NCBI RefSeq assembly: GCF_006345805.1
Contig: NC_043023.1
Location: forward strand, 6,076,001 to 6,140,000
From: Octopus sinensis
Lineage: Eukaryota
DNA length: 64,000 nucleotides
Direction: 5' to 3'
The notes below the pieces were generated by a model. It had not been told where the DNA came from and made no database searches. It saw nothing but the letters and a program-made list of their open reading frames with translations. Within the stretch, counting starts at the first letter, position 1, and every line of letters starts with the position of its first letter. A program made the position numbers and the translations under genes. This document shows, piece by piece, positions 4,183-39,607 of this stretch.

Positions 4183-4470
4183 GCAAGACAAGATTTGAAC
4201 ACTTCCCAGTAGATTTGGTGGTGTATAAAGGGGAAGACGCAAAATTCACATGTGTTGCCATGACAGACCCTATGGAAGCTGACAATCTGCGTATAGTTTG
4301 GTCCAAGGATGATGATGTCACAGTCATTGATGAGAAGAGGATCATCCAGAATCCCAAAGACAATTCACTGATCATCAGGAGTGTAAAGGAAACGGATGCT
4401 GGCCTCTATTCATGTGTGGCTACAAATGGATTGGATTTTATCAAAGCGTTTGCTCGTCTCAAAGTAAGAG
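4183..4470 (+). CDS. Ig exon A: L1/neuroglian-family Ig6-like domain, copy 1
   Basis: ttgcag acceptor and G|gtaggt donor; 288 nt, phase 1-1. Encodes GKTRFEHFPVDLVVYKGEDAKFTCVAMTDPME...W.KD...DNSLII...DAGLYSCVATNGLD...LKVR, with the Ig C-W-C core and the DP and Y.C.A..LD motifs typical of L1-family Ig6. Confidence 0.9.
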
Positions 4471-4572
4471 GTAGGTTCATTTCACGTGTATGTGTGCCAT
4501 TCTCCCACTCTCCAGGAATAGCCACCTATGTCTGTGCTCCCCAGGATTCAATTTTAACTATTCTACACACAT

Positions 4573-4652
<80 letters not shown>

Positions 4653-4737
4653 TGAGATTGGTCCTTTAATAAAGTAACATAGAAACGAATGGTGAATAGT
4701 TTAGGGGTGTAATTTGCAGTCGCAAGTTTTTGAGTTA

Positions 4738-4769
<32 letters not shown>

Positions 4770-4771
<2 letters not shown>

Positions 4772-5085
4772 TGTGTACAGTGCTCAGGTGCACTACAACT
4801 CATCTAAAGTGTATATATAATCAGGTGTAGTTTCGGCGGATTTCGGAAAGCATGAGGGCCTTAAAGGATGCAGTGTCATGGCAGTCAACAACTGACGCAG
4901 GCAGTTTATTCCATGCTTCAGCAACTCTGAGCGTGAAGAAATGTTTCCGAAAGTCATGGGAGCTGTGTTGTTTTCTGACTTTGTAGGCATGTCCACGTGT
5001 GTTAGACACAAGGAGATCAAAAAGGTGTTCAGTATTGTTGTTGGTGAGGTGGTTGATAACTTTCAATCTATCTGTAAGGTATCTT
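4770..5085 (-). mobile_element. 5'-truncated CR1/L2-type LINE 3' end
   Basis: Encodes TRGHAYKVRKQHS...RKHFFTLRVAEAWNKLPASVV and has a (TAA)n tail. A sister fragment lies at about 36712-36990 (+). Confidence 0.7.
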
Positions 5086-5092
5086 GGACAAG

Positions 5093-5138
<46 letters not shown>

Positions 5139-5390
5139 CCAAACACACGACAGGCTTCTTTCAGTTTTTGTCTACCAAATCCACTCACAAGGCATTGGTC
5201 GGCCTGGGGCTATAGCAGAAGACACTTGCCCAAGATGCCACGCAGTGGGACTGAACCCAGAACCATGTGGTTGGTTAGCAAGCTACTTACCACACAGCCA
5301 CTCCTGCACCTATGTATTAAACAATATACATAGAAAACTAGAAGACAAACCCGGCCTTGCTCGGGATTATATATATATATATATATATAT

Positions 5391-5421
<31 letters not shown>

Positions 5422-5426
<5 letters not shown>

Positions 5427-5848
5427 GTAATAATATGTTACCATTATTCAATAGTCAAGATAAAACTCTGAGTTTCAGATGCCGAAGTGGAAATCGACAA
5501 CACCATCTCTTCGGTTATCTGGCCATCTGAAAAATGCTATGAAATAAAACTGTTATTCAAAGGGAAATTACTGTGTTTTAATTCCGCTACTTATATAAAT
5601 TATATAATTATATAATTAAGTGTATGAGTAGCCATACTTACGTGTTTACTATGAACTTTTAACCTTAATTTATATAAGTAGCGGAATTATAACACAGTAA
5701 TTTCCCTTTATATAACGGTATTTTTTCATAGCGTTTTTCAGATGGCCAGATAACCGAAGAGATGGTGTTGTGGATTTCCACTTCGGCATCTGAAACTCAG
5801 AGTTTTATCTTGACTATTGAATAATTGTCACATATTAATTTACAGATA
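5422..5848. mobile_element. MITE-like fold-back element
   Basis: Long imperfect terminal inverted repeats (tatctgtaa...ttacagata, arms about 170 nt) around a short AT-rich core; abuts a (TA)n run. Confidence 0.75.
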
Positions 5849-6268
5849 AATTTCCTCTATTTACATAATATTGAGGTCTCTTTCTTTCTTTTGTTATCTT
5901 ACCGTTTTACCAATATATATATATATATGCACATATATATGTTTCTTGTCCAAGATACCTTACAGAGAGATTGAACTTATATATATGCATATGCATGTAC
6001 AAATAAATATATATGCGTATAAATGTATGTATATATGTAAAAAAAATAGTGAAAAGAGTTTTCTCTTTTTCTCTTTACTTGTTTCAGTCATTTGACTGCA
6101 GCCATGCTGGAGCACCACCTTTAGTCAAGCAAATCGACCCCATGACTTATTCTTTGGAAGCCTAGTACTTATTCTATCAGTCTCTTTTGCTGAACTGCAA
6201 AGTTACGGGGACGTAAACACACTAGCATCTGTTGTCAAGCAATGTAAGGGGGACAAACAAGCACACAC

Positions 6269-6320
<52 letters not shown>

Positions 6321-6322
<2 letters not shown>

Positions 6323-7380
6323 TCACAATCAAGGAACGGCCATAATAGGCCATTCACCCACTAGAAATAACAGCCAAAAGCTTTAACCGCAAAATAACAT
6401 CAATTCCGTAAACCAGGAGAAAATTAAAAAACATTTACCCTGTAATTTCTTATACGACGCACCGTTTCGTCTACTGTTTAATGGTAAACTAACCTGATTA
6501 AATTAAATCAAGCCAATCTACCATAGGCCCTTAGATTCATCAGTAAGAAATAGCCAAGTCGGAACAGATATTTTTCACGAGGCATTCCCGTCCCTGCCTC
6601 GGCAATATCTGACCTAAAATTTTCAAATCATCGCACTTGCGCCAAATTTATCGGCAGCAAATAAATATAAGCCGCCGATTCCATTACGGAATTAACCAGA
6701 AAATTCATAATTAATCAATATAGGGTGGCAAAAAAATTTTGTAGAATTTTTTTTTGCCACCAGCGGCCTAGTGGGAAAAAATTAAATAGTCATAGACCAT
6801 TTTTAAGTTCAACATCACAATCAAGGAACGGCCATAATAGGCCATTCACCCACTAGAAATAACAGCCAAAAGCTTTAACCGCAAAATAACATCAATTCCG
6901 TAAACCAGGAGAAAATTAAAAAACATTTACCCTGTAATTTCTTATACGATGCACCGTTTCGTCTACTGTTTAATGGTAAACTAACCTGATTAAATTAAAT
7001 CAAGCCAATCTACCATAGGCCCTTAGATTCATCAGTAAGAAATAGCCAAGTCGGAACACTGATGAATCTAAGGGCCTATGGTAGATTGGCTTGATTTAAT
7101 TTAATCAGGTTAGTTTACCATTAAACAGTAGACGAAACGGTGCATCGTATAAGAAATTACAGGGTAAATGTTTTTTAATTTTCTCCTGGTTTACGGAATT
7201 GATGTTATTTTGCGGTTTAAGCTTTTGGCTGTTATTTCTAGTGGGTGAATGGCCTATTATGGCCGTTCCTTGATTGTGATGTTGAACTTAAAAATGGTCT
7301 ATGACTATTTAATTTTTTCCCACTAGGCCGCTGGTGGCAAAAAAAAAATTCTACAAAATTTTTTTGCCACCCTATATTGA

Positions 7381-7387
<7 letters not shown>
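6321..7387. repeat. 492-bp tandem unit plus 328-bp near-perfect inverted repeat
   Basis: catcacaatcaagg occurs at 6321 and 6813; 6708-7035 is the reverse complement of 7059-7387 with a 23-nt spacer. Confidence 0.9.
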
Positions 7388-7429
<42 letters not shown>

Positions 7430-7834
7430 CATATATACAATGAGCTTCTTTCAGTTTCTGTCTACCAAATCCACTCACAAGGCTTTGGTCAGCCCGAGGC
7501 TATAGTAGAAGACACTCGCCCAAAGTGCCATGCAGTGGGACTGAATGTAGAACCATGTGATTGGTAAGCAGGCTACTTACTACACAGCTGCTCCTTCCAA
7601 AATTCCATGTGAAATATATGGAAAAGAAGGAAAATGCACAAAAATGTTATGTTGGGAAAGATACATTTATGAAATAAAAAATATTTACATAGTCAACCAG
7701 TTTCGATTCTACACATCATAATGAAGTAGTTAATGTTATAATTCCATGTTATTATAAGTTGTCATCCCACATCAGTAGATCAGATATTTTGTAATACACA
7801 CACACACGTATATACTTATATACAAACATTTTAA

Positions 7835-8150
7835 AAGACTCCGCCGGTTACGACAACGAGGGTCCCAGCTGATACGATCAACGGAACAGCTTGCTCGTGA
7901 AATTAACGTGCAAATGGCTGAGCATTCCACAGACACGTGTACCCTTAACGTAGTTCTCGGGGATAATCAGCGTGACACAGAGAGTGACAAGGCTGACCCT
8001 TTGAAATACAAGTACAACTCATTTTTGCCAGCTGAGTGGACTGGAGCAACGTGAAATAAAGTGTCTTGCTCAAGGACACAACGCGTCGCCGGGAATCGAA
8101 CTCACAACCTTACGATCATGAGCCGAATGCCCTAACCACTAAGCCACATG
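7835..8150 (-). mobile_element. tRNA-derived SINE (second head type)
   Basis: Reverse strand reads ggcatgtggcttagtggttagg...gttcgattccc (A/B boxes) then ttgtgtccttgagcaagacac. A related copy lies at 43921-44240 (+). Confidence 0.7.
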
Positions 8151-8187
8151 CCCTCACTATACAAACATAATTCATATTTCATTGCAG

Positions 8188-8481
8188 CCAAGATAAGAAT
8201 TGAACCCTCTCCATCGAATCTGGTCATGAAGAAAGGGGAAGATGCACAGTTCATGTGTGGTGCCACAACTGATTCCATTGAGGTCAACAACCCGCATATC
8301 ATTTGGAGGAAGGATACTGAGGTCATAGACATCAATGAAGACATCAATGAAGTCATCCAGAATTCCAAAACCAGTTTATTGATCATCAGGAATGTAACCA
8401 GAAATGATGCTGGTCGCTATATGTGTCTGGCCATAAATGGATTGGACATTGTCAATGCCTCAGCCCTTCTCACAGTCAAAG
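8188..8481 (+). CDS. Ig exon B: L1/neuroglian-family Ig6-like domain, copy 2
   Basis: ttgcag acceptor and G|gtaagc donor; 294 nt, phase 1-1. Encodes AKIRIEPSPSNLVMKKGEDAQFMCGATTD...W.KD...DAGRYMCLAINGLDIVNASALLTVK; clearly paralogous to exons A and L. Confidence 0.9.
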
Positions 8482-8519
8482 GTAAGCTCATTTTGTTAGT
8501 AAACTCACCCACACACATA

Positions 8520-8748
8520 TACTCTTTTACTCTTTTACTTGTTTCAGTCATTTGACTGCGGCCATGCTGGAGCACTGCCTTTAGTCGAGCAAATCGACCC
8601 CGGGACTTATTCTTTGTAAGCCCAGTACTTATTCTATCGGCCTCTTTTGCTGAACCGCTAAGTGACAGGGATGTAAACACACCAGCATCGGTTGTCAAGC
8701 AATGCTAGGGGAACAAACACAGACACACAAACATATACACACACATAC

Positions 8749-8805
<57 letters not shown>

Positions 8806-8975
8806 CATATATACGACGGGCTTCTTTCAGTTTCCGTCTACCAAATCCACTCACAAGGCATTTGTCGGCCCGAGGCTATAGCAGAAGACATTTGCCCAAG
8901 ATGCCACGCAGTGGGACTGAACCCGGAACCATGTGGTTGGTAAGCAAGCTACTTACCACACAGCCGCTCCTGCAG
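8520..8975 (-). mobile_element. Dominant tRNA-derived SINE (representative - strand copy)
   Basis: About 400 nt: A/B-box head, ccttgggcaag core, central (TA/TG)n and (AAAGAGT)n tail. Dozens of full or partial copies occur across the window in both orientations. Confidence 0.85.
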
Positions 8976-8979
8976 CATC

Positions 8980-10627
8980 AGCTGAAAATATATTAGGCTG
9001 AGAAAGATAAATGAGGTTTATTTTTCAACATAATCACCCTTGTGGTCCACTCACTGCTCAGATCCCATTGGCAAAAACAGTTTTCATCCTGCTGGTCAAA
9101 AACATCAGCAACATCAAATATGAAGCTGGTCAAGAGCAGATTTGATGTCATCCCTGCAATACTAGTTTCCAGCAAAGAGTTTCTTCATGTTGGGCTTATT
9201 CAGGATATTAGGGATGGTGATCAACTATTCCAAAGCCACAGTGATGCACAGCAACCATTGAAAGTAAGGACTTGTGTGCTGGAGCATTGTCTTAATAAAA
9301 CAAGAGCACTTTTGCTAGTTTTCCTCGGAGTTTGATCTTCATAGCCTTTCATAACTGCCTCAGCAAGTTGGCACAGTACTTTCCATTGACAGTGGGCTCT
9401 TTTGAAGGTAGTCGATAAACTCAATGCCTTTTGCATCCCAAAAACCTGAGGCCATCACCTTCTCTGCAGAAAAAAATTACCTTGGTCTTCTTTGGAACAG
9501 GTGATGTGAGGTGTTTCCATTGCATGGACTGTCTCTATTTTTGGCTCAAACTAAGGAACCCAACACTCAAACTGATTCGGAAATGTTTGAGAAAATCAAC
9601 TGGATCTGCCTCAGACAATGTCAGGTTTTCCCATGATGCAACCAGCCTGGTGCGCATCATGGGTGTCAGATGTGACACCCACTAAGCAGAAACTTTCATC
9701 ATGCCAAGTTCATTGTGCAAAATATTCTTAACTTATTCTTTTACTCTTTACTTGTTTCAGTCATTTGACTGTGGTCATACTGGGACACTGCCTTTAGTCG
9801 AGCAAATCGACCCCAGGACTTATTCTTTGTAAGCCTAGTACATATTCTATCAGTCTCCCTTGCCAAAACCGCTAAGTGATGGGGACATAAACACACCAGC
9901 ATCGGTTGTCAAGCGATATTGGGGGGACTAACACAGACACACAAACACACACACATATATATATACACACACACATATATATATACACAACAGGCTTCTT
10001 TCAGTTTCCGTCAACCAAATCCACTCACAAGGCTTTGGTCGGCCCGAGGCTATAGTAGAAGACACTTGCCCAAGATGCCATGCAGTAGAACTGAACCCAG
10101 AACCATGTGGTTGGTAAGCAAGCTACTTACCACGCAGCCACTATCCTAAAAGCATTGGCTATTTGATTTATAGTCAGCCAACTGTCATCCATCCCTATGT
10201 GGTGAACACAAACAACGTTTTCCTCAGTGGTGACAGTTGCAGGATGTCCAGAGCTTATGTCATCTTCGAGAGCATCTATTCTCCTCCTAAATTCAACAGC
10301 TAACTTTTGCACTCTTGCACTTTTTAAAACTGGAGTATCATTCCCCATTCCGTAATGTAGCAACCATGTTAGCATGCATATCCTTGGGAGCTAAAGCCTT
10401 TTTTCTGTAGGGACTTGATAACACCATGATGCCAAATTTTATCAATTTTCAAGAGAAGTTGCTACTAGTTCATTTGAAGTTTCCTTTGAACAGTCGCATA
10501 TCAGTTTACCAAGAAGCCATCAATGCAGTTATTAATAAGAAGTGTTGGAAATAATGCATGCAAAATTTCACAGCTCTAGTATCATTCTTTCATAGTCAAA
10601 TGATGAACTTTTCAGCCTACCCTCGTA
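8980..10627 (-). mobile_element. Degenerate mariner-type DNA transposon, interrupted by a SINE
   Basis: TIR-like tacgagggtaggctgaaaagttca on the - strand at 10604-10627. Broken transposase pieces include LEDDISSGHPATVTTEENV, KKTKV...SAEKVMA..FWDAKG and HHPY. A SINE occupies about 9735-10145. Confidence 0.7.
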
Positions 10628-11677
10628 TAATATATACATATGTGAGAGCACTTTCAACAGACCCATCCCTACCCACAGTAATGAGGCATGAATGAGAAAT
10701 GGATTCACTGGGAACAGTGTAAATATTGATAAATATGCCACACACATAAGATAATCAAAAAGGGAAATACCTATTTCACTTAGAAGTTTCAACCAGGATA
10801 GCTAAGATCTCCCGGATGCTAATTATAAGAAACAGTTCCCTTCAATGCATAAGTATTATAAACTCTTGAACCCTTACAATGTTGAAGTCAATTACTCCTA
10901 CTTAAACAACATCATAAAAGATACTCACTCCTAACACACCCTCCAACCTGTAGTCAGCAAAATCCTACAAACTACCTTCTAGGAAGATTTTGCCTCTAAA
11001 AAGTTGTATTTTGAGAGCCACCTTCACACCATCTGATGGCATCAGAAGACACTACATGAGATGACTACCAATGTCTTTTGTGGGATGGGATACTCAATAA
11101 AGACACGCCTTCAGGTGTAGAGATAGAGCAAAATACTACCTCCCTGTCCCACTTCATCTGGAGACTCTGCCAAACATCTGAATAACCTCCACATCATCAA
11201 ATGGAGTATCACTGATAGAGTACCCTTACTCACATGGAATTTGCAATCGCTAACTCTACCTCTGCAAGAGACAACAAATACTTCATGAAGCTGCAGTATC
11301 CATTGACAGGAAGAATGACCTTTCATTTTGTTGCCACCAGAGGTACTCACTATTAATGAACTCAAGACTGGCTGCTGATAATTCAGATACACTGATTAAC
11401 TCCCTTCCCTCAAAAATTAATGGCCCTGTGCTGAAATTTGAAAATATATTTGGCGAAGCCATGTCTGGCTACCTATAGATAAATAGTACTTTATTTGGAA
11501 ATAGGTAAGAGTTGGCAACAGGAAGAGCATCCTGCTGTGGAAATTCTGCCTTAATAAACTATGTTTGACTCATGCAAGCATGAGACATGGATTTTATGAT
11601 GCTGCTGCTGATTAGGATTATGATGATTATATGTGTAGCAATAACCATTTTAACCATTTTGAAATATGGCGCGAATT

Positions 11678-11760
11678 GGCAATATGACGTAATGTCATAT
11701 TGCCGAAGAATTATTATTTTCGTTTTTTCCATTGGTTAATATAACTGCTCATATAAAGAT
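11678..11760 (+). promoter_or_regulatory. Candidate promoter for the Ig1-Ig6 unit
   Basis: CRE-like TGACGTAA (11685-11692) lies inside an 11-bp-stem hairpin (11678-11704), followed by ATTGG (reverse CCAAT, 11731) and CATATAAAG (11750). A YY1-like AATATGGCG is just upstream and a strong donor CG|gtaatt follows at 11908. Motif co-occurrence only. Confidence 0.3.
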
Positions 11761-12064
11761 TCTAAAAGTTTCATAAAGAATATTTGTAATGAATTTCGAT
11801 TCTTTTAAGTCAAGTTGAGCAGTTATAAAATCCCTGGCTTTTGGGAAAAATTTCAGTGTTTGTTGGATGTCACTAAACTCCACGACACTCACTCTTTTGA
11901 GACATCGGTAATTTTCATGCCATGTCCAAAGATAATCACAAGTCTATTTTGATTTGTTGATTAATCTATTAGTTAGATTTACGAATTAGTTAATGAATTT
12001 ATAGTTGTTCTTCTACACGACAAAAATTGTCTTTCCTTCCTACTGTAAATAATATAAAACGTTA

Positions 12065-12448
12065 TCTCTCTATATATAAACGGCAGTTTGTCTGTGCGTG
12101 TTTCTGTGTGTCTGTTTGCTTGTACCCTCACCCTGACCACGGCTTTCAACCGATTCTGATGAAACTTGACACACACATAGCCCAATGTCATAATTCAAAA
12201 CTAACGCAGCCAAAATTTTGAAAAGTTCCCCCAGTTCTGAAAAAAATCGATAAATTCGACATGGGGTCGAGAATCAGAAACACAAACCACAAACTGTCTA
12301 GGGGACGCAACTCCACCTTTTTTAACTCTCAAAAAAAATTTACCATCATTTTTTTCCATTTTTTTGCTATTTTTTGGCTATGACTCTCTAAAAATGCTTT
12401 ATAGTTATTTCCCTTATAAACCTGAGCAACGCCGGGCGATACTGCTAG
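12065..12448 (+). mobile_element. Non-autonomous Helitron (copy of 3783-4154)
   Basis: a|TC start, CTAG|t end, near-identical to the first copy. Confidence 0.75.
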
Positions 12449-12593
12449 TGTTTATATAATAAAACTAATTAAGAAAATGTTTCTCTTCACGTTTGTTTTT
12501 TCAACTGAGTATAAATAAATATGCATTTCTGTAATGATTAATTTATATTTTCTTATAGCGGTTAAAAGGACACGAAGAAAATATTCAACATAC

Positions 12594-12664
12594 ATGTCGT
12601 TAATATTCATAACGTTTCATGAGTATATCTCTCTATGACGTTATATACTGTAGTTCGGGTTTGG
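12594..12664 (+). CDS. Candidate start/signal-peptide exon of the Ig1-Ig6 unit
   Basis: Acceptor ttttcttatag ends at 12558. ATG 12619 gives MSISLYDVIYCSSGL + G|gtataa, a phase-1 donor in frame with exon C. Deleting one T from the TTT at 12615-12617 would join ATG 12594 to give MSLIFITFMSISLYDVIYCSSGL, which resembles a signal peptide. The donor is moderate and the long form needs a 1-nt correction. Confidence 0.35.
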
Positions 12665-12795
12665 GTATAATGATAACACATTTAATCATTATATTCCTCC
12701 TTACTCAGAAAAAAGCCAAATAAAATAATATAACCTAAGAGAAAGCTGAAGGTAGCATAATAAGCCTCTATAATAGTGATGCTCTCCTCTTTCAG

Positions 12796-12907
12796 ATGGA
12801 GGTACACAGCCACCTGTGATGTTAATCAACCCACCTACCCAGGTACCGTTTAAAGAATTAGAGGCTGTGGTAGTTCCATGCAAGGCCAGTGGAGAACCAC
12901 AACCTAC
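12796..12907 (+). CDS. Ig exon C: first half of L1/neuroglian-like Ig1
   Basis: ctttcag acceptor and AC|gtaagt donor; 112 nt, phase 1-2. Encodes (D)GGTQPPVMLINPPTQVPFKELEAVVVPCKASGEPQP(T). Not in the ORF track; found by reading the sequence. Confidence 0.85.
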
Positions 12908-16594: not shown

Positions 16595-16965
16595 GTACAC
16601 CTGGAAAAAGGACAAACGGGACTTCAACGTGGCTGGCAGTGATGACTTTATCTCCACAGTACCAAACGAGGGAACACTTGTGTTCGAGCGACCCAAAAAG
16701 AAGGATGCCGGCACGTATCAATGTTTTGCAAACAACTCTTATGGGGTGGCCATGTCAGGCATCGTTGAGCTACGGCTTGCCTTCCTGATGCCGTACACCA
16801 ATCAGGAACCAGAGACCATCACTGTGTTACCAGGGGCATCTCTCGTCCTCCCTTGTAACAAGCCAATCAGTTACCCTGAGGCCAACGTGACGTGGGTGTT
16901 GAAACACAAAGATGGATCATTCAAGGCCTTTGACTTCACTGAACGAATCTTAATGGACCACCAAG
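16595..16965 (+). CDS. Ig exon D: end of Ig1 and first part of Ig2
   Basis: accag acceptor and G|gttagt donor; 371 nt, phase 2-1. Encodes YTWKKD...GTLVF...DAGTYQCFANNSYGVAMS...LRLAFL...LVLPCNKPISYPEANVTW...ERILMDHQ, the typical L1/neuroglian Ig1-Ig2 junction. Confidence 0.92.
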
Positions 16966-17933: not shown

Positions 17934-18062
17934 CCAACCTCATCTTTACTAATGTATTAGAAGAAGACTCCTGCAGAGACGCTGCCTATGTCTGCATGGC
18001 TACCAACAAGTTTAACCGAGAAGCCACACGGGGCAAACCGTTTCATTTGAAAACTATACCAA
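17934..18062 (+). CDS. Ig exon E: end of Ig2
   Basis: ctctttcag acceptor and A|gtgagt donor; 129 nt, phase 1-1. Encodes ANLIFTNVLEEDSCRDAAYVCMATNKFNREATRGKPFHLKTIP (L.F.NV...D...Y.C motif). Confidence 0.9.
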
Positions 18063-19443: not shown

Positions 19444-19546
19444 TGCCACCTGAAAATCACCAGCCTCATCTAATCAATGTTGCCCCTAATAAGGGGCTCT
19501 TTCTTAAGGGAGACACAGTGAAGTTGCAGTGTATATTTGGTGGACA
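19444..19546 (+). CDS. Ig exon F: start of Ig3
   Basis: ctttcag acceptor and CA|gtgagt donor; 103 nt, phase 1-2. Encodes MPPENHQPHLINVAPNKGLFLKGDTVKLQCIFGG(H); CIFGG.P.P is characteristic of neuroglian Ig3. Confidence 0.88.
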
Positions 19547-21974: not shown

Positions 21975-22180
21975 TCCGACACCGGAAATCCGATGGTTCC
22001 GAAACACTAAAGAGAGAAGAATACAAATAGAGCAGGATACAAAGTATCGGTTTTCCAGCTCTAAGCATCAGCTCAATATTCTGGATGCTGGGTTTGAGGA
22101 CGAAGGAATCTATGAATGCCACGCACGTGTAACAAGTTTCAGCCAGGCAATGCAACGAGTCATGACCGTGAAGATTGAAT
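21975..22180 (+). CDS. Ig exon G: end of Ig3
   Basis: ttctcag acceptor and T|gtaaat donor; 206 nt, phase 2-1. Encodes PTPEIRWFRN...QLNILDAGFEDEGIYECHA...VMTVKIE. Confidence 0.9.
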
Positions 22181-23365: not shown

Positions 23366-23497
23366 CTAAACCTGAATGGACGAAACCAAAAAGTATTGTG
23401 ACCAGTGTGGGCAGTTCAGTTACCTTCATCTGTAATGGAACTAGCAAACCTCCCATCAGTAAACACATGTGGTACATCAATGGAAAGAGAATTAACG
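23366..23497 (+). CDS. Ig exon H: start of Ig4
   Basis: gtttcag acceptor and G|gtaagt donor; 132 nt, phase 1-1. Encodes SKPEWTKPKSIVTSVGSSVTFICNGTSKPPISKHMWYINGKRIN. Confidence 0.88.
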
Positions 23498-28914: not shown

Positions 28915-29058
28915 AATATCCCAATAAAAATAAGTTTATAGTACAGGAAACCAACCTGACTGTCATCAACCTCACATACCAAGATTCCATGACCATCCAG
29001 TGTAATATGAGTAATATCCATGGGTATATCTTCGCTGATGCCTTTCTATATGTCTTTG
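28915..29058 (+). CDS. Ig exon I: end of Ig4
   Basis: ttttgcag acceptor and G|gtgagt donor; 144 nt, phase 1-1. Encodes EYPNKNKFIVQETNLTVINLTYQDSMTIQCNMSNIHGYIFADAFLYVF (QCN.SN.HGY motif of L1-family Ig4). Confidence 0.9.
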
Positions 29059-29220: not shown

Positions 29221-29259
<39 letters not shown>

Positions 29260-29368
29260 TTGCTGCTGCTGCTACTACTACTACTACCACTACAACTACT
29301 ACTATTATGCTGCTACTACTACTACTACTATTACTACTACTACTACTACAACTGCTGCTGTACTGCTG

Positions 29369-29399
<31 letters not shown>

Positions 29400-29662: not shown

Positions 29663-29705
<43 letters not shown>

Positions 29706-29720
29706 TACCACTACTGCAAG
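29135..29720. repeat. (CTA)n compound microsatellite
   Basis: About 580 nt of CTA/CTG/CCA triplets shortly after exon I. Confidence 0.95.
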
Positions 29721-31055: not shown

Positions 31056-31683
31056 TCTCTATATGTAAAAAGATTTGAGTGAGGTCGTTGCCAGTACAGC
31101 GTGACTGGCCCCTGTACCGGTGGTATGTAAAAAGCACCCACTACACCCTCGGAGTGGTTGGCATTAGGAAGGGCATCTAGCTGTAGAAACTCTGCCAAAT
31201 CAACATTGGAGTCTGGTGCAGCCATCTGATTCGCCAGTCCTCAGTCAAAATCGTCCAACCCATGCTAGCATGGAAAGCGGACGTTAAACGATGATGATGA
31301 TATAAAGCTGAAGTTGTCCGTGTGTGGCAGGTTTGGTAGCCTTCAACTAACACAATCTCCTCCGAGACCCTGCAGCGCAAGTTGACAAAAATTGAGAGTA
31401 TAATAGAAGAAGGCTTGCTCTTCCTTCCATAGAAGAAAAAATTCAAATCAGACCATGTTAACACCAAAAATTATTTACATAAAAAAGGTGCTTATTTTTC
31501 TATGAAAATCCTATTTTTTAACGATTTTTTGACTGCTGTGTCGTCATTTTTCGGTGTATTTCAACCAGAAAAATGTTCACTTAAAGAGAATAACAAGCAA
31601 CATAATGCAAATTCTTTACTTTTCAAAAATTCCAATTCTAAAGGGTCGAAACAAATCCGAGCAACGCCGGGCGATACTGCTAG
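31056..31683 (+). mobile_element. Helitron with a nested GAT-tailed repeat
   Basis: a|TCtctatat at 31056; GAT-tailed repeat at about 31065-31299; the element resumes at tataaagctg and ends gagcaacgccgggcgatactgCTAG|t, the same 3' end as 3783-4154. Confidence 0.55.
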
Positions 31684-31911: not shown

Positions 31912-32093
31912 CTGAGGCACCGGATTTGCTAGAAAAGGGGAACATGACCCTGAAGAGATCCGAGGGTCAGACCATAAACATTACGTGCAAGACAACTGGC
32001 TATGATTCGGTGCAGGTGCTTTGGATGAAGGATAACAAACAGATGACAGGTGACAGGTATCACATACTAAGGAATGGCAATCTAAACATCAAG
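31912..32093 (+). CDS. Ig exon J: start of Ig5
   Basis: ttttgcag acceptor and AAG|gttagt donor; 182 nt, phase 1-0. Encodes AEAPDLLEK...EGQTINITCKTTG...VLWMKD...DRYHILRNGNLNIK. Confidence 0.9.
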
Positions 32094-33604: not shown

Positions 33605-35060
33605 GAAAGGAAACAAGTGGAACCTTCTCATAGACTGATTAATGATATATCAAGTGATGGTGTCACAATAAAAACACTGGTAATTGCACAACTTGATAAT
33701 CGCTACCTCATATGAGTGACAATGAAAAACCAAAATATTGTGAATAACAGTGGTAATGAAACTGAAGCCAATGATGATGACAGTGTTCCACCCGGCAGGC
33801 TCAGAGATTCTGGCCTGGCTCCAACTTGTCGATATCCAGAAAGGGACCACCACACATGGCATAGATGGAGCAAGCAAATTAATGCTGTGATCATGGAGTG
33901 TTACTACCTGAGCAGCCTGGCAGATGAAAATGGTGCTCAAATTAGGGGTTACCGACAATGTATGTATAATCACTGGAGAGAAAAGGGATTGTTTCAACTC
34001 ACGGAACAGAGACTATGTGATTAAGCTAGAGCAATAAGAAAAAAATCGTTGGTTCACAGAAGTAGAGCTGGAAGTTATCAAAAGACAGGTCATGGTAAAT
34101 AGCAGCAGAGATAACGATGAGAATACAGTTCTTACTAATAAGAGTAATCGCATAGCACAGGAAAGGAGCAGTGGTAGTTTACTTGATGAGAGACATACAG
34201 ACGATCTAAAAGAAGATGATAAAACTAATGGTGATATGACAGATGAACAAAAGGCAATCTACGACAGAACAAAGGTAAGGCTACAGGAGAACAATAGCGA
34301 CATTATTTGCAACCTTAAAAAGGTTGATTGATGGAAATTGAACGAAGAAACGAAAAATGTCAATGAAATCTTGAAATACATCAGAAAAACTACTGATAGA
34401 CAAAACTGTACTTGGAGACTGCAAGAGGAGGAAAAGTAACTTAGCCATGTCATGGATCAACTATTGTAAAGCGTACGATATGATCCCACATTCTTGGATT
34501 ATGGAATGTGTGAACCCATTTGGTATTGCATCGAATGTTCAGCGATTGCTTGGAAAAAGTATGGCGAATTGAAGGACGGATCTGACAGCATACGGAAGAA
34601 GTTTAGGGGCAATAGAAATCAGGAGGGGCATCTTCCAAGGGGACTGTCTGTCCCCAGTGATCTTTGTACTGTGCTTGATACCACTAACACTGATTCTGAG
34701 GAAAGCAAAAGATGGGTGTGTATTCAAAAACTGCTAACAAAAAGTCAACCATTTGTTATTCATGGATGACCTCAAACTTTGTGGTAAAGATGAATCCCAA
34801 GTCAGTTCCCTCGTTGATACGGTGTTTACCTTCAGTGCTGATACCAGAATGGAGTTCGGACTGAGAAAGTGTGGTGTGTTAGTCTTGAAGAGAGGCAAAA
34901 TCAAATGTCTGGATGGGCTATCGATACCTTCAGGGTAGGTTATGAAGCAGATAGAAGAGATGGGCTATAAGTTCTTGGGGATTTTGAAAACGGGATAAAT
35001 TGATGGAGAAAGAAATGACAGAAAAATTTAAGGTGGAGTACTTGCACAGACTGAGACTAA
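33605..35060 (+). mobile_element. R4/Dong-clade LINE, internally deleted remnant
   Basis: N-terminal W...MECYY...W...TEQRLCD segment and RT pieces (YCKAYDMIPHSWI, GIFQG, FMDDLKL, MEFGLRKCG); begins right after a (TAA)n tract. Confidence 0.7.
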
Positions 35061-35953
35061 AAAACATTCGAGCGAGGTTGTTGCCAGTGCCGCTGGACTG
35101 GCTCTTGTGCAGGTGGCACGTAAGAAACACCATTTGAGTGTGGCCGTTGCCAGTAGCGCTTGACTGGCCCTCATGCTGGTGGCACATAAAAGCACCCACT
35201 ACACTCTCGGAGTGGTTGGCATTAGGAAGGGCATCCAGCTGTAGAAACTCTGCCAGATCAGATTGGAGCCTGGTGCAGCCATCCGGTTTGCCAGTCCTCA
35301 GTCAAATCATCTGACACTGGTAATAATCACACTCGAATGGTGCCTTTTATGTGCCACTGGCATGGAAGCCGGTTAGCCGCTATGTCAATGATCATGCTCG
35401 TATGGTGCTCTTTGCACCCTTCTAGCATGGATGCCAGTCATCAAATTTGATTTCGATTACACTTGCCTCAACAGCTCTTCGCATTCATCCAAATTTCACA
35501 AAGGAAGTATTAAGCTGGTTTTTTTTCAGTGTTCTCCAAGAGAAAGTACAACAGAAATTACATTTACATATTTTCAAAAATTCATAGTGATATCTACCAT
35601 AGGAAAGAGAAGTCAGCGAATAACGTTTCTCCAATAATTTTCTGAGGAAGGGTTTCTAACTCTGAAATATTGAAATACCAGATAACACAACCAATCCATT
35701 TTATTTTACAAATTGCAGTGTTTTGGGTTTAAAAAAATTTTTATTTGGAAACACTTAGGATTAAAAAGTTCTATCATAGGCCTAAAAGTGGCTGTGGGTT
35801 AAGTAGCTTGCTTACCAACCACATGGTTCCAGGTTCAGTCCCACTGTGTGGCATCTTGGGCAAGTGTCTTCTACTATAGCCTCGAGTCAACCAAAGCCTT
35901 GTGAGTGGATTTGGTAGACGGAAACTGAAAGAAGCCTGTCATATATATGTATA

Positions 35954-36007
<54 letters not shown>

Positions 36008-36072
36008 CATATATATATATATATATATATACATATACATACATATATGTATATATATATATATATATACAT

Positions 36073-36114
<42 letters not shown>

Positions 36115-36189
36115 TTATACATATATATATATACACATAAATCCTTGTGAGTGGATTTGGTAGTTGGAAACTGAAAGAAGCCCATCGTT

Positions 36190-36234
<45 letters not shown>

Positions 36235-36515
36235 GTGTGTGTATGTGTTTGTGTGTCTATGTTTGTCCCCCCCCCCCAACATCACTTGACAACCAATGCT
36301 GGTGTGTTTACGTCCCCGTAACTTAGTGGTTCGGCAAAAGAAACCGATAGAATAAGTACTAGGCTTGCAAAGAATAAGTCCTGGGGTCAATTTGCTCGAC
36401 TAAAGGCGGTGCTCCAGTATGGCCACATTCAAATGACTGAAACAAGTAAAAAGAGTAAATTCTCAGTTACCTCCCTTAGTATTTCTACTAATTTTTTTGT
36501 ATTGTTCTTTCACAG

Positions 36516-36606
36516 AATTTGGACTTAACAGATACTGGCGTCTATCATTGTTATGCTAGTAACAAGTATGGTATGGTCTCAGCAACGAGGAACCTTATAG
36601 TCCGAC
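36516..36606 (+). CDS. Ig exon K: end of Ig5
   Basis: ctttcacag acceptor and C|gtgagt donor; 91 nt, phase 0-1. Encodes NLDLTDTGVYHCYASNKYGMVSATRNLIVR. Confidence 0.9.
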
Positions 36607-37085
36607 GTGAGTATATCTGTTCATTGCTTTTTATTTTCCCTTCCCTTCTCTGTGCTCTAGATGTTACTAGCTAACAAGGGCCCTGTACTGTTTGTGAGAG
36701 CCATGGAGGAGGGCAATATTTTTCATGCTGAGAGATGCTGAAGCATGGAACAAACTGCCGGCATCGGTTGTTAGTTGTCGGAGCACTGCATCCTTCAAAA
36801 CTTCCATGCTTCCTGAGAGATTCGCCAACACTACACCTGATCTTTCTCCCCTCCATACACACGCAAGCATGTATCTGACTCATACACTGTTCGCTTCCCA
36901 GGCATTTGTACATTACTGCATATGCTTTATACACACTTTCTGACAAGTTGTGGTGCACCTGGGCACTGTATACAATAATTTCATTATTATTATTATCTAT
37001 GCTAAGAATTGCCAAGTTTACAATATATATTTAAATGTGTGTATGTGTGGATATATATATACATACACATATATATATACATACA

Positions 37086-38030
37086 AAGGCGGCTATCTGG
37101 CAGAATCGTTAGCATGCCGGGTGAAATGCGTAGCCGTATTTCGTCTGCCGTTACGTTCTGAGTTCAAATTCCGCTGAGGTCGACTTTGCCTTTCATCCTT
37201 TCGGGGTCGATAAATTAAGTACCATTTACCCACTGGGGTCGATGTAATCGACTTAATCCCTCTGTCTGTCCTTGCTTGTCCCCTCTATGTTTAGCCCCTT
37301 GTGGGTAGTAAAGAAATATATATATACATACACATATATATATACATACAAAGGCGGCTATCTGGCAGAAGCGTTAGCACCCCGGGTGAAATGGGTAGCC
37401 GTATTTCGTCTGCCGTTACGTTCTGAGTTCAAATTCCACCGAGGTCGACTTTGCCTTTCATCCTTTCGGGGTCGATAAATTAAGTACCAGTTACGCACTG
37501 GGGTCGATGTAATCGACTTAATCTGTTTGTCTGTCCTTGTTTTTCCCCTCTGTGTTTAGCCCCTTGTGGGTTGTAAAGAAATATATATATACATACACAT
37601 ATATATATACATACAAAGGCGGCTATCTGGCAGAATCGTTAGCATGCCAGGCGAAATGCGTAGCCGTATTTCGTCTGCCGTTACGTTCTGAGTTCAAATT
37701 CCGCCGAGGTCAACTTTGCCTTTCATCCTTTCGGGGTCGATAAATTAAGTACCAGTTATGCACTGGGGTCGTTGTAATCGACTTAATCCCTCTGTCTGTC
37801 CTTGTTTGTTCCCTCTGTGTTTAGCTCCTTCTGGGTAATAAAGAAATAGGTATTTTGTCTGCCGTTACGTTCTGAGTTCAAATTCCACCGAGGTCGACTT
37901 TGCCTTTCATCTTTTCGGGGTCGATAAATTAAGTACCAGTTACGCACTGGGGTCGTTGTAATCGACTTAATCAGTTTGTCTGTCCTTGTTTGTCCCCTCT
38001 GTGTTTAGCTCCTTGTGGGTAGTAAAGAAA
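37086..38030 (+). repeat. Locally amplified tandem array of a tRNA-derived SINE
   Basis: Three ~265-bp units share the private head variant ggcggctatctggc and the same preceding microsatellite; one additional head-less unit follows. Confidence 0.85.
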
Positions 38031-39316
38031 TATATATATACATACACATATATATATACATACACATATTCTGACAAGTGAAAATTGTGTAAATGTAATC
38101 ATAGGCCATATATTACAGGGAATACTCATGTTTACATATTTACAACTTATGTAACCATGGTGACTGGATTTGGTAGATGAAAACTGAAGAACCTTGCTAT
38201 ATAAAAATCAGAAAACAGGAATCACAATGGCTGTCTGTACTTATCCTCTAGAGGGAAAGAGGGGAGAGAGTAAGAGAGAAGAAAGAATGAGAGAAGAGAG
38301 AAAGAGAGAAGAGAGAAGAAAGAACGAGAGAAGAGAGAAAGAAAGAGAGAAAGAGAGGAGAGGGAAAGAGAGTAGGGGTGAAGAGAAGTGGGAGTCAGGG
38401 CAAGAGAGGAGAGTCGGGTGGGAGGAAGTAGGAGGGACGGGAAAAGGGTCAAGGGGAGGAGAGAGAAGGAGAAAAAGAGAGTAAGAGAGTAGGGGTGAAG
38501 AGAAGTAGGAGTGAAGAGGAGTGGGAGTCAGGGCAAGAGAGGAGAGTCGGGTGGGAGGAAGTAGGAGGGACGGGAAAAGGGTCAAGGGGAGGAGGTTAGA
38601 TGAAGAGGGAAGGAGAGTTGAGCCCAAATGGCGTAAAGAAACAAAGAGAGAAGATGAATCCTTGTTCACAGCACAAACGGGAGTCAGGATGGCATCCTCT
38701 GTGCAAGGACAATCCAAACTCAATCAGGAAAAGTAGAGTGAGGATTAAATTTCAATTAGATATAATATTTGATCACTTGTTTTCTTTATTCAAGATTCGG
38801 ACAGAACTTACGGGATGACCTGATAATAGGATAATTTGTAATGTTACCCCAGGAGGATAATTACTAAACACTCTTTACGCTTTTACTCTTTTACTTGTTT
38901 CAGTCATTTTGACTGTGGCCATGCTAGAGCACCGCCTTTAGTCGAGCAACTCGACCCCGGGACTTATTCTTTTTTGTAAGCCCAGTATTTATTCTATCGG
39001 TCTCTTTTGCCGAACCGCTAAGTAACGGGGACATAAACACACCAGCATCGGTTGTCAAGCAATGCTAGGGGACAAACACAGACACACAAACACACACGCA
39101 TACATATATATATACATATATACGATGGGCTTCTTTCAGTTTCCGTCTACCAAATCCACTCACAAGGCTTTGGTCGACCTGAGGCTCTAGTAGAAGACAC
39201 TTGCCCAAGGTGCCACGCAGTGGGACTGAACCCGGAACTATGTGGTTGGTATGCAAGCTACTTACCACACAGCCACTCTTGTACCCTTTTTATATTCAAA
39301 TCATATATCATTGCAG

Positions 39317-39607
39317 GCAAGACAAAAATTGAACCCTCAGCATTTGATAGAAGAGTGAAGGAAGGAAGGGCTGTAACGCTCCCCTGTGCTGCCACAACTG
39401 ACCCTATGGAGGTGGACAATTTGCAGGTCATTTGGTTGAAGGATGGAAAATCCATAGACATGGATGAGGGGAGAATAATTCAGAACACTCAGGACAATTC
39501 ACTGACCATCAACAGTGTAATAATTGGAAAGGATGGTGGCCGCTACACATGTGTGGCCACAAATGGATTGGATTGGGCCAAAATGTCAACGTTTCTTTAT
39601 GTCATGG
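39317..39607 (+). CDS. Ig exon L: Ig6 (third Ig6-like copy)
   Basis: ttgcag acceptor and G|gtaagt donor; 291 nt, phase 1-1. Encodes RKTKIEPSAFDRRVKEGRAVTLPCAATTDPMEVDNLQVIWLKDG...DNSLTI...DGGRYTCVATNGLD...LYVM. Confidence 0.92.

What the first reader, a model, noticed from the sequence alone, without database searches (positions are those of the whole stretch)
4183..39607. Three paralogous, splice-symmetric Ig6 exons: tandem gene cluster, concatenated Ig polymer or cassette splicing
Seen: exons A, B and L are all Ig6-type (TD..E..N...W.KD...IQN...D.G.Y.C.A.NGLD), all follow ttgcag and are all phase 1-1. By eye A and L are about 45-50% identical in amino acids. Two adjacent Ig6 exons upstream of an Ig1 are not a canonical L1 arrangement. 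B can splice in frame to C, so A-L could be a single 781-codon, 8-Ig stretch. Alternatively A and B belong to an upstream paralog with a duplicated Ig6 that could be included, skipped or used mutually exclusively. Each reading points to lineage-specific Ig diversification by exon duplication.
Basis: partly seen in the sequence, partly recalled or inferred. Interest (0 to 1): 0.7.

Follow-up and report, generated by a model that had tools for sequence, protein, structure and literature searches.

The report
Extra Ig6 exons in octopus L1-like gene
Two intact extra copies of the sixth-immunoglobulin-domain exon sit just upstream of the first Ig exon of an octopus neuroglian/L1-like adhesion gene, have been kept by selection, and most likely belong to a tandem array of such Ig units that is read through in frame; this is a moderately interesting lineage-specific variant, not a new kind of system.

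Summary
Twelve + strand exons (A-L) with AG/GT sites give one open 781-codon frame. A (4183-4470), B (8188-8481) and L (39317-39607) are single-exon, phase 1-1 I-set domains, 43-51% identical to each other and at most 33% to the other Ig exons.

An HMM built only from canonical mollusc neuroglian Ig6 domains scores L 99, A 91 and B 78 bits; every other window ORF scores 15 or less.

A and B are not decaying relics. They have no stops, keep the Ig hallmark residues and splice sites, and show one or two in-frame indels per pair where about 8 are expected. dN/dS is only moderately below 1 (0.5-0.9), so they evolve fast.

C-L is a divergent octopod paralogue of neuroglian (L1 family). A and B group with a fourth Ig6-type domain in Octopus sinensis model XP_036370269.1. 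There it follows Ig4 of an upstream unit and joins in frame to the next unit's Ig1. Oyster, Solemya and Bulinus models show similar joined Ig modules.

Best reading (about 0.55): A and B are tail exons of an upstream Ig unit in a tandem array and splice onto C. A separate upstream gene or optional cassette use remains possible. Exchange with L is unlikely. No transcript data could be reached.

The parts
4183..4470 (+). Exon A: single-exon Ig6-type I-set domain, phase 1-1, 288 nt
   Evidence: Acceptor ctttgcag|GC and donor GAG|gtaggt. Pfam I-set 2-90/90, E 2.3e-13. Canonical-Ig6 HMM 90.8 bits. 51% identical to L and 49.5% to B. Best stretch falls on Ig6 of contactin-1 (488-585) and neurofascin (511-595).
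8188..8481 (+). Exon B: single-exon Ig6-type I-set domain, phase 1-1, 294 nt (one 6-nt in-frame insertion)
   Evidence: Acceptor cattgcag|CC and donor AAG|gtaagc. Pfam I-set E 2.2e-12. Canonical-Ig6 HMM 77.5 bits. AlphaFold model has pLDDT 79.9 and TM 0.87 to contactin-1 Ig domains. Its C-terminal half resembles the O. sinensis X1 domain.
12796..12907 (+). Exon C: first half of Ig1 (GGTQPPVMLINPP...), phase-1 acceptor; a second in-phase acceptor lies at 12802
   Evidence: 77.5% identical to residues 506-545 of XP_036370269.1. B's last base plus the 12802 acceptor reads K-G-TQPP, the same junction as in that model.
16595..16965 (+). Exon D: second half of Ig1 plus first half of Ig2
   Evidence: 96.8% identical to unit 2 of XP_036370269.1.
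17934..18062 (+). Exon E: second half of Ig2
19444..19546 (+). Exon F: first half of Ig3
21975..22180 (+). Exon G: second half of Ig3
23366..23497 (+). Exon H: first half of Ig4
   Evidence: 83% identical to XP_036370269.1.
28915..29058 (+). Exon I: second half of Ig4
   Evidence: 80% identical to XP_036370269.1.
31912..32093 (+). Exon J: first half of Ig5
   Evidence: 67% identical to O. bimaculoides neuroglian.
36516..36606 (+). Exon K: second half of Ig5
39317..39607 (+). Exon L: canonical-position Ig6, single exon, phase 1-1, 291 nt
   Evidence: Acceptor cattgcag|GC and donor TGG|gtaagt. Canonical-Ig6 HMM 98.7 bits. Aligns to Ig6 of contactin-2, contactin-1 and neurofascin.
4155..4182 (+). 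Conserved acceptor-proximal intron segment shared by A, B (8165-8187) and L (39289-39316); homology between the three copies stops here
   Evidence: blastn HSPs extend only 23-28 nt upstream and about 12 nt downstream of the exons. The motif TCATATWTCATTGCAG is exact upstream of B and L.

Best explanation
A and B are real, selectively maintained, internal coding exons. They arose by old genomic duplications of the single-exon Ig6 domain within a fast-evolving branch of the neuroglian/L1 family so far seen only in Octopus, organised as tandem Ig 'units'.

They sit at the 3' end of whatever lies upstream of the window. By homology with O. sinensis XP_036370269.1, that is most likely a signal peptide plus an Ig1-4 unit. 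All inter-domain introns are phase 1, so B's donor can splice in frame onto the Ig1 exon C. The product would be one long multi-Ig ectodomain, with Ig6-type domains placed N-terminal to a complete Ig1-Ig6 set. Because the exons are symmetric, A, B or both could also be skipped without breaking the frame.

Shown: paralogy, Ig6 type, intactness, non-neutral evolution, frame compatibility, absence of an own start exon for C-L nearby, and the existence of the same kind of junction in a relative's gene model.

Inferred: that B is actually spliced to C, and what lies upstream.
For: Paralogy and Ig6 type.

Selection:
- Under neutral change at the branch dS (0.30-0.36), the chance of staying stop-free and keeping the C, W and D.G.Y.C residues is 0.001-0.002 per exon. 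It is 0.01-0.03 even at the observed total divergence.
- The indel rate calibrated on 555 repeat pairs in the window is 0.088 per mismatch. That predicts 7.5-9 indels per exon pair. Only 1-2 are seen, all multiples of 3 (P 0.003-0.006).
- Homology between the copies ends about 25 nt upstream and about 12 nt downstream of the exons, so only the exon and its splice signals were kept.
- All three copies remain full-length I-set domains, and B folds as one.

Internal-exon status: neither the A nor the B ORF offers a start with a signal peptide, and both keep good donors.

Same transcription unit as C-L:
- No phase-1 signal-peptide exon and no homologue of the octopus signal exon MKISPLSIFILV... 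occurs anywhere in 1-12795.
- No FN3, TM or other Ig ORF lies between B and C.
- 59% of positions 1-12795 recur elsewhere in the window, and the ORFs tested between B and C have no Pfam domain.
- A-B, B-C and C-D spacings (3.7, 4.3 and 3.7 kb) look like the gene's other introns.

Precedent:
- XP_036370269.1 (O. sinensis, neurofascin-like) reads signal-Ig1-4-[Ig6-type X1]-G-TQPPVILINPP (Ig1 of the next unit). Its Ig1/2 exon is 96.8% identical to D.
- X1 groups with A+B (85% bootstrap).
- In-frame joined L1-like Ig modules also occur in Ostrea edulis (5 isoforms), Solemya velum and Bulinus truncatus models.
Against: No RNA evidence of any kind could be reached. The B-to-C junction is inferred only.

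The supporting gene models are computational. XP_036370269.1 contains an exact internal repeat of about 300 residues that starts at the D/E exon boundary. That points to an assembly duplication or a model artefact. Predictors easily fuse tandem paralogues when every Ig exon is phase 1, and the Solemya model P0097 looks like such a fusion.

X1 is only 45-48% identical to A and B, so it is a paralogue and not an orthologue.

dN/dS is high (NG86 0.49-0.62, ML 0.69-0.86), so constraint is weak or recent loss of function is possible.

A weak candidate start exon exists at 11587-11734. A true signal exon could also lie further than 12.8 kb upstream, with A and B in the first intron.

No known horseshoe IgCAM has Ig domains N-terminal to Ig1. 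This last point rests on my own knowledge of the family.
Confidence: 0.55

Rival explanations
1. Separate tandem genes. A and B are the last Ig exons of an independent upstream paralogue that terminates between B and C. C-L is a second gene with its own promoter and start.
For: L1-like paralogues are tandem in molluscs. Gene models that fuse them may be artefacts. X1, the closest relative of A/B, closes a unit that has its own signal peptide. A weak hydrophobic ATG exon with a phase-1 GT lies at 11587-11734.
Against: B has a strong, conserved donor (AAG|gtaagc), so it is not a terminal exon. No FN3, TM, GPI-like or other recognisable coding ORF occurs in 8482-12795, where SINE and other repeat copies are frequent. 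No homologue of the family's signal exon is present. The 11587-11734 candidate is AT-rich and has a 22-residue hydrophobic run followed by a second hydrophobic stretch and a weak gttaat donor.
Confidence: 0.2
2. Variable-constant cluster. The upstream unit ending in A/B and the unit C-L are alternative 5' modules. Each splices from its last Ig exon to shared FN3/TM exons beyond the window, as in clustered protocadherin or UGT1 loci.
For: B and L both end in phase 1 with good donors. The next exon after L is more than 24.4 kb away, so distant shared exons are conceivable. Octopus has clustered protocadherins (PMC10084454).
Against: Each variable module needs its own promoter and signal exon. 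None is found for C-L within 12.8 kb. No relative's model shows Ig6-type spliced over a whole unit. The one available model joins it to the next Ig1.
Confidence: 0.08
3. Dead or dying exon copies. A and B are untranscribed relics of exon duplication lying in the 5' intron or flank of the gene.
For: dN/dS is 0.5-0.9, and identity is nearly equal at the three codon positions for B-L (0.65/0.66/0.61). Neither database search indexed for close relatives found a protein containing A or B, though the index evidently lacks molluscs altogether.
Against: Open frames, retained Cys/Trp/D.G.Y.C residues, retained AG/GT and acceptor-proximal motif, and only in-frame indels. The joint probabilities under neutrality are well below 1e-3. 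Pfam and canonical-Ig6 HMM scores are as good as for L.
Confidence: 0.07
4. Dscam-style mutually exclusive alternatives. A, B and L are interchangeable versions of the Ig6 position, or A and B are a mutually exclusive pair.
For: The three exons have nearly the same length (288, 294 and 291 nt), the same phase and the same domain type. A and B are adjacent.
Against: Ig1-5 exons lie between A/B and L, so colinear splicing cannot swap them into position 6. No complement of the shared acceptor-proximal motif (a docking site) exists on the transcribed strand near the gene; there are 4 matches against 2.2 expected, and two of the four are the motif itself. An A-B pair choice is not excluded but nothing supports it.
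Confidence: 0.03

Closest known systems
Canonical mollusc neuroglian / L1-family CAMs (Haliotis rubra XP_046562214.1, Mizuhopecten yessoensis XP_021340443.1, Acanthosepion pharaonis 'NRCAM' CAE1307932.1, O. bimaculoides neuroglian XP_052833792.1)
   Same: Six I-set Ig domains in the same order. C-L is colinear with neurofascin and contactin Ig1-6. It is 38-61% identical to these mollusc proteins over the Ig region. A, B and L carry the Ig6 signature TTDPxEV..L.I.W.KD...QDNSLTI...D.G.YTC.A.NGLD.
   Different: In the canonical proteins one Ig6 is followed by D-[RK]PD.P and FN3 repeats. Here two further Ig6-type exons lie upstream of Ig1. The octopus copies are only 43-51% identical to each other. 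Canonical Ig6 is 63-78% identical between cuttlefish, gastropods and scallop, so the octopus copies evolve much faster. FN3, TM and tail are outside the window and untested.
Octopus sinensis XP_036370269.1 'neurofascin-like' (Gnomon model, 969 aa)
   Same: Same divergent subfamily: 63% identity over Ig1-5, with exon D 96.8%, H 83% and I 80%. It contains an Ig6-type domain (X1) that is sister to A+B. X1 is joined in frame to an Ig1 exon with the junction ...SVK-G-TQPPVILINPP. The window can form the same junction from B plus the acceptor at 12802.
   Different: X1 is a paralogue (45-48% identical) and not the orthologue of A or B. The model has one Ig6-type domain between units rather than two, and no Ig5. 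It also carries an exact internal repeat of about 300 residues, which makes its second half suspect.
Ostrea edulis 'neuronal cell adhesion molecule-like' XP_056000704-07 / XP_048740136 (and Solemya velum KAL5013687, Bulinus truncatus KAH9489607)
   Same: L1-like Ig modules are repeated in tandem and read in one frame. Signal-Ig1-4-Ig1-4 appears in all five oyster isoforms. This shows that concatenation of L1-type Ig units recurs in mollusc annotations.
   Different: The repeated unit there is the Ig1-4 horseshoe, with no Ig6-type linker domain. These are short secreted-type models. All are predictions.
Arthropod Dscam1 variable exon clusters
   Same: Tandem duplicated, equal-phase exons each encode a whole or half Ig domain. 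This is a route to lineage-specific Ig diversity.
   Different: Dscam alternatives sit at the position they replace and use docking and selector RNA pairing. Here the copies are displaced upstream of Ig1, and no docking complement is found.

Membership tests
L1-type IgCAM (L1CAM / neurofascin / NrCAM / neuroglian) | Six consecutive I-set Ig domains colinear with family members | tested here: met
   C-L (586 aa) aligns end to end with neurofascin 155 (E 5e-66) and contactin-1/-2 Ig1-6. Pfam finds 6 I-set stretches. The nearest named proteins are octopus neurofascin-like and neuroglian.
L1-type IgCAM (L1CAM / neurofascin / NrCAM / neuroglian) | Fibronectin type III repeats directly after Ig6 | tested here: inconclusive
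   No FN3-like ORF occurs anywhere in the window, including the 24.4 kb after L. This rests on an FN3 consensus phmmer search and a regex. L keeps a good donor, so the next exon probably lies beyond the window.
L1-type IgCAM (L1CAM / neurofascin / NrCAM / neuroglian) | Single transmembrane helix and cytoplasmic tail (distinguishes L1 type from GPI-anchored contactins) | not testable with these tools
   This region lies outside the window. The octopus paralogue P0033/XP_052833792.1 has 5 FN3, a TM helix and a tail, which makes the L1 type likely by relatedness only.
L1-type IgCAM (L1CAM / neurofascin / NrCAM / neuroglian) | Ig1 follows the signal peptide directly (horseshoe at the N-terminus) | tested here: inconclusive
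   No signal-peptide exon, and no homologue of MKISPLSIFILV..., occurs in the 12.8 kb upstream of C. Two Ig6-type exons lie there instead. The true 5' end is outside the window.
Ig6-type domain of mollusc neuroglian | Scores with a profile of canonical Ig6 domains well above other Ig positions | tested here: met
   With a profile built from external sequences only, L scores 98.7, A 90.8 and B 77.5 bits, against 15 bits or less for the other window Ig exons. External Ig6 scores 150-164 bits and external Ig1-5 score 28 bits or less.
Dscam-like mutually exclusive exon cluster | Alternatives lie in tandem at the position they replace | tested here: not met
   A and B are 27-35 kb upstream of L, with the Ig1-5 exons in between.
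Dscam-like mutually exclusive exon cluster | Docking site complementary to a selector sequence upstream of each variant | tested here: not met
   The reverse complement of the shared acceptor-proximal motif has no match on the transcribed strand near the gene. There are 4 hits against 2.2 expected by chance.
Variable-constant cluster (clustered protocadherin / UGT1 type) | Each variable module has its own promoter and first coding exon | tested here: not met
   No start or signal exon for the C-L module occurs between B and C or anywhere in 1-12795.
Non-functional duplicated exon (pseudo-exon) | Stops, frameshifts, lost splice sites and loss of fold-defining residues at the neutral rate | tested here: not met
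   None of these is present. The neutral expectations are rejected, and the splice signals are conserved.

The most novel reading that the evidence does not exclude
Octopods carry a tandem array of rapidly diverging L1/neuroglian-derived Ig units. Because every exon is phase-1 symmetric, the units could be spliced combinatorially, by unit read-through or by inclusion or skipping of Ig6-type cassettes such as A and B. That would yield a repertoire of poly-Ig adhesion receptors. It would be an independent route to neuronal surface diversity, beside arthropod Dscam1 and the clustered protocadherins.
Probability: 0.12. Interest if true: 0.8.

Novelty: new variant of a known kind. Interest (0 to 1): 0.45.

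Why it matters
L1-family adhesion molecules are among the most conserved neuronal wiring receptors, with 6 Ig domains followed by FN3 repeats in animals as distant as molluscs, insects and vertebrates. The known expansions tied to the cephalopod nervous system are protocadherins, C2H2 zinc fingers and GPCRs.

A fast-evolving, tandemly repeated neuroglian-derived locus with selected extra Ig6-type exons would add an IgCAM family to that list. If the units are truly read through, it would give an L1-type receptor with Ig domains placed in front of the horseshoe, which would change how such a molecule could bind.

There is also a practical point. Because all Ig exons are phase 1, gene predictors can fuse or truncate these loci. 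The O. sinensis and O. bimaculoides models look affected, so this family needs long-read transcript curation before any comparative claims are made.

Tried and rejected
- The two word-indexed protein searches (A+B, then exon D) returned nothing. The later exhaustive search showed that mollusc proteins are in the collection but evidently not in that index, so I did not spend the third search.
Exon D alone was used instead. As feared, giant multi-Ig proteins flooded the list, but the informative L1-like hits were recoverable.
I replaced it with an FN3-consensus phmmer search of all stop-free stretches.
- The signal-peptide exon search gave only SINE-derived or AT-rich spurious candidates. I used two stringencies plus homology to the octopus signal exon.
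- A search for K'-like or other Ig1-5-type exons upstream of A or between A, B and C found none.
- A search for a Dscam-like docking site found none.
- Literature searches for an octopus L1/neuroglian expansion or Ig6 duplication found nothing specific.
- I considered contactin identity for C-L. It is less likely because the closest named octopus relatives are TM-type neuroglian or neurofascin-like, but it cannot be settled inside the window.
- I considered and rejected orthology of the window with the XP_036370269.1 locus. Per-exon identity ranges from 50% to 97%, and X1 is only 45-48% identical to A/B.

Full report
1. OBSERVATION

Reading the three named sites shows the exons exactly as described:
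- A 4183-4470 (ctttgcag|GC...GAG|gtaggt)
- B 8188-8481 (cattgcag|CC...AAG|gtaagc)
- L 39317-39607 (cattgcag|GC...TGG|gtaagt)

These are C 12796-12907, D 16595-16965, E 17934-18062, F 19444-19546, G 21975-22180, H 23366-23497, I 28915-29058, J 31912-32093 and K 36516-36606.

Joined, the twelve exons are 2343 nt, which is 781 codons without a stop. A, B and L each begin and end in phase 1. The A|B junction reads LKVR-A-KIRIEP and the B|C junction reads LLTVK-D-GGTQPP.

2. IS THE SIMILARITY REAL AND SPECIFIC?

Within the window, tblastn gives these identities:

| Pair | Identity | E-value |
|---|---|---|
| A-B | 49.5% | 2.5e-25 |
| A-L | 51.1% | 3.7e-23 |
| B-L | 42.3% | 4.5e-19 |

No Ig6-type exon matches any other Ig exon better than 33% or E 1e-5. 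Nucleotide identity is 64-70%.

Each is a complete Pfam I-set domain. In the solved six-Ig structures, the best-matching stretch of A, B and L is the sixth domain of contactin-1 (488-585) and of neurofascin (511-598).

The cleanest test uses a profile built only from canonical Ig6 domains of other animals: Sepia, Pomacea, Haliotis, Mizuhopecten, Solemya and two others. It scores L 98.7, A 90.8 and B 77.5 bits. Every other ORF of the window scores 15 bits or less. In outside proteins the same profile gives Ig6 150-164 bits and Ig1-5 28 bits or less.

An AlphaFold model of B, the most divergent copy, is an Ig sandwich with pLDDT 79.9. Its best structural match is the contactin-1 Ig region, at TM 0.87.

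There are exactly three Ig6-type exons and twelve Ig-coding ORFs in the window, all on the + strand, and no FN3-like ORF.

3. WHAT GENE IS THIS?

C-L aligns end to end with the six Ig domains of neurofascin and contactins. An exhaustive HMMER search with exon D found mollusc L1-like proteins among many giant Ig proteins. Their database names were retrieved.

The Ig region of the window has these identities to relatives:

| Relative | Identity |
|---|---|
| Unit 1 of Octopus sinensis XP_036370269.1 'neurofascin-like' | 63% |
| O. bimaculoides neuroglian | 61% |
| Cuttlefish 'NRCAM' | 44% |
| Abalone neuroglian-like | 38% |

The repeat content fits an octopus genome. This is inferred from the named relatives and from the abundant SINE-like copies.

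The locus is therefore a divergent paralogue of neuroglian, so far seen only in Octopus, and not the canonical orthologue. Per-exon identity to the O. sinensis model is mosaic: D 97%, H 83%, I 80%, C 77%, and E-G 50-58%. That is what gene conversion or unequal exchange among tandem copies would produce (inference).

4. AGE AND MODE OF THE DUPLICATION

Homology between the three copies runs through the exon and only 23-28 nt upstream and about 12 nt downstream. Beyond that the flanks are unrelated, or are younger SINE copies that are 82-92% identical to other copies. So the copies arose from genomic DNA, not from mRNA, and only the exon and its splice signals have been retained.

Pairwise dS is 0.55-0.70.

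A neighbour-joining tree places the four octopus Ig6-type domains together (71% bootstrap). Within that group, X1 of the O. sinensis model pairs with A+B (85%), and L is their sister. The canonical Ig6 of cuttlefish, gastropods and scallop forms a tight clade (100%).

Canonical Ig6 domains are 63-78% identical across classes of molluscs. The octopus copies are 43-51% identical to one another. These domains evolve unusually fast.

5. ARE A AND B DECAYING?

Pairwise dN/dS is 0.49-0.62 by NG86 and 0.69-0.86 by ML. Splitting the NG86 distances over a three-branch star gives about 0.44 for A, 0.53 for B and 0.71 for L. This is my own arithmetic on the values. A and B are thus no less constrained than the canonical L.

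With 95 codons these ratios are only marginally below 1, so I used other tests.

(a) Stops and hallmark residues. I simulated neutral change from the three-way consensus at the branch dS.
- The exon stays stop-free 10-13% of the time.
- It keeps all six fold-defining residues (Cys, Trp, D.G.Y.C) about 1% of the time.
- It does both 0.1-0.2% of the time.
- Even at the lower observed total divergence, the joint figure is 1-3% per exon.

(b) Indels. The indel rate measured on 555 pairs of repeat copies inside this window is 0.088 gap openings per mismatch. That predicts 7.5-9 indels per exon pair. One or two are seen, of 6 nt and 3 nt, both in frame (P 0.003-0.006 before counting the frame).

(c) Splice signals. 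The acceptor-proximal motif and the GT donors are kept in all three copies.

(d) Domain scores. Pfam and Ig6-profile scores equal those of L.

Neutral decay is rejected. Weak or diversifying constraint fits best.

6. HOW ARE A AND B USED?

This part is inferred.

Neither A's nor B's ORF contains a usable start with a signal peptide. Both have good donors, so they are internal exons of a transcript that begins upstream of the window.

Exon C also needs an upstream phase-1 donor. A search of 1-12795 for ATG-hydrophobic-GT exons found only SINE-derived or AT-rich chance candidates. The least bad is 11587-11734, with a 22-residue hydrophobic run and a gttaat donor. The signal exon shared by the octopus relatives (MKISPLSIFILV...) has no homologue in the window.

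Between B and C there is no Ig, FN3 or other recognisable coding ORF. About 59% of positions 1-12795 recur elsewhere in the window. The A-B, B-C and C-D distances (3.7, 4.3 and 3.7 kb) resemble the other introns.

The simplest reading is that B, and/or A, is spliced to C.

Exon C has two in-phase acceptors 6 nt apart, at 12796 and 12802. With 12802 the B|C junction reads K-G-TQPP. That is the junction written in XP_036370269.1 (...FLSVK-G-TQPPVILINPP).

7. EVIDENCE FROM RELATIVES

XP_036370269.1 reads: signal peptide, Ig1-Ig4, one Ig6-type domain (X1), then directly Ig1-Ig2 of a second unit. The equivalent of exon D in that second unit is 96.8% identical to the window.

Solemya velum KAL5014246 reads Ig5-Ig6 of one copy joined (FLTVK-D-PTRPPEIY) to a full Ig1-6/FN3/TM copy. 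Ostrea edulis has five isoform models of a signal-Ig1-4-Ig1-4 protein, all with the same inter-unit junction. Solemya KAL5013687 and Bulinus KAH9489607 are similar.

In canonical neuroglians, Ig6 is followed by D-[RK]PD.P and FN3.

Tandem L1-like Ig units that can be read in one frame therefore recur in molluscs. A and B look like the Ig6-type tail of such a unit.

Caveats:
- All these are computational models.
- XP_036370269.1 has an exact internal repeat of about 300 residues that begins precisely at the D/E exon boundary, so its second half may reflect an assembly duplication.
- Fusion of neighbouring paralogues is an easy predictor error when every exon is phase 1.
- X1 is a paralogue of A and B, not an orthologue (45-48% identity).

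8. READINGS RANKED

Best (about 0.55): A and B are selected internal exons at the end of an upstream Ig unit and are spliced in frame to C. This gives a multi-unit ectodomain. Constitutive or cassette inclusion is left open.

Rivals:
- Separate upstream gene ending after B: 0.2.
- Variable-constant cluster with shared distal exons: 0.08.
- Dead relics: 0.07.
- Dscam-like mutual exclusion: 0.03. The copies are not at the position of L, and no docking complement exists.

9. COMPARISON AND NOVELTY

The parts are ordinary: I-set domains, an L1-type gene, and phase-1 exon duplication. The variant features are as follows.
- Ig6-type exons are displaced upstream of Ig1.
- They have been retained for a long time while evolving fast.
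- They belong to an octopus subfamily of neuroglian-derived units.

Searches of the held literature found no description of this. Papers on cephalopod expansions deal with protocadherins, zinc fingers and GPCRs.

RefSeq already carries a predicted protein with the same kind of junction. The locus type is therefore annotated but not analysed. I file it as a new variant of a known kind, of moderate interest. It would rise sharply if transcripts show combinatorial use.

10. LIMITS

No transcript data and no cephalopod genome other than this window could be reached. The 5' and 3' ends of the gene lie outside the window. dN/dS rests on three 95-codon paralogues without orthologues.

Noticed in passing
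P0033, P0151-P0155 (O. bimaculoides neuroglian models), residues about 505-620; window repeats at 31118-31210(-), 35059-35259(-), 43258-43383(-), 55466-55558(-): All O. bimaculoides 'neuroglian' models lack an Ig6 domain. Between Ig5 (..TLIVRR) and FN3-1 (ARPEAPTKV..) they carry filler. In the UniProt versions this filler is 56-85% identical to interspersed repeats that also occur in this window. The Ig6 exon of the canonical octopus gene seems to be missed or missing in those annotations.
   Followed up: partly
P0002 (XP_036370269.1), residues 181-479 versus 670-968: There is an exact internal repeat of about 300 residues, starting precisely at the exon D/E boundary. The preceding Ig1-Ig2a parts differ by 19-30%. 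This suggests a duplicated block in the O. sinensis assembly or a model artefact.
   Followed up: partly
window 16595-16965 (exon D) versus the neighbouring exons: Identity to the O. sinensis model is mosaic: D 96.8%, H 83%, I 80%, C 77.5%, but E, F and G only 50-58%. This fits gene conversion or unequal exchange among tandem units, or very strong constraint on the Ig1/Ig2 junction.
   Followed up: no
window 12796 and 12802: Exon C has tandem in-phase acceptors 6 nt apart (cag|ATGGAG|GT). They would add or omit two residues (D-G versus G) at the N-terminal end of Ig1.
   Followed up: no
window 39608-64000: There is no further Ig or FN3 ORF in the 24.4 kb after exon L, although the earlier introns are 1-5.4 kb. 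The stretch holds a Tc1/mariner-like transposase remnant (48480-49365; HTH_Tnp_Tc3_2, DDE_3). It also holds a LINE with endonuclease and RT (58346-61430) and an RT fragment on the minus strand (62806-63198).
   Followed up: partly
window 33716-34935: A reverse-transcriptase (RVT_1) remnant lies in the J-K intron on the + strand.
   Followed up: no
window 13195-13722; 18202-18918; 37051-38032; 44241-44746; 45239-45583: Long-period tandem repeats sit inside introns and downstream. Periods are 148 nt (3.6 copies, 97% matches), 184 nt (3.9 copies), 265/184 nt and 174 nt. The 184-nt unit recurs at three places.
   Followed up: no
window 19612-20322; 29171-29715; 41161-41472: Large simple-sequence expansions are present. 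One is an ACC/CAC-rich array directly after exon F. Another is (TAC)n of about 182 copies directly after exon I. The third is (GT)n of 156 copies. The first two begin within about 110 nt of splice donors.
   Followed up: no
window 8520-8975 and 38876-39285, and many other sites: B and L are each flanked on both sides, at similar distances, by copies of the same abundant SINE-like element (82-92% identical between copies). These are younger than the exon duplication, so they are independent insertions near both exons.
   Followed up: no
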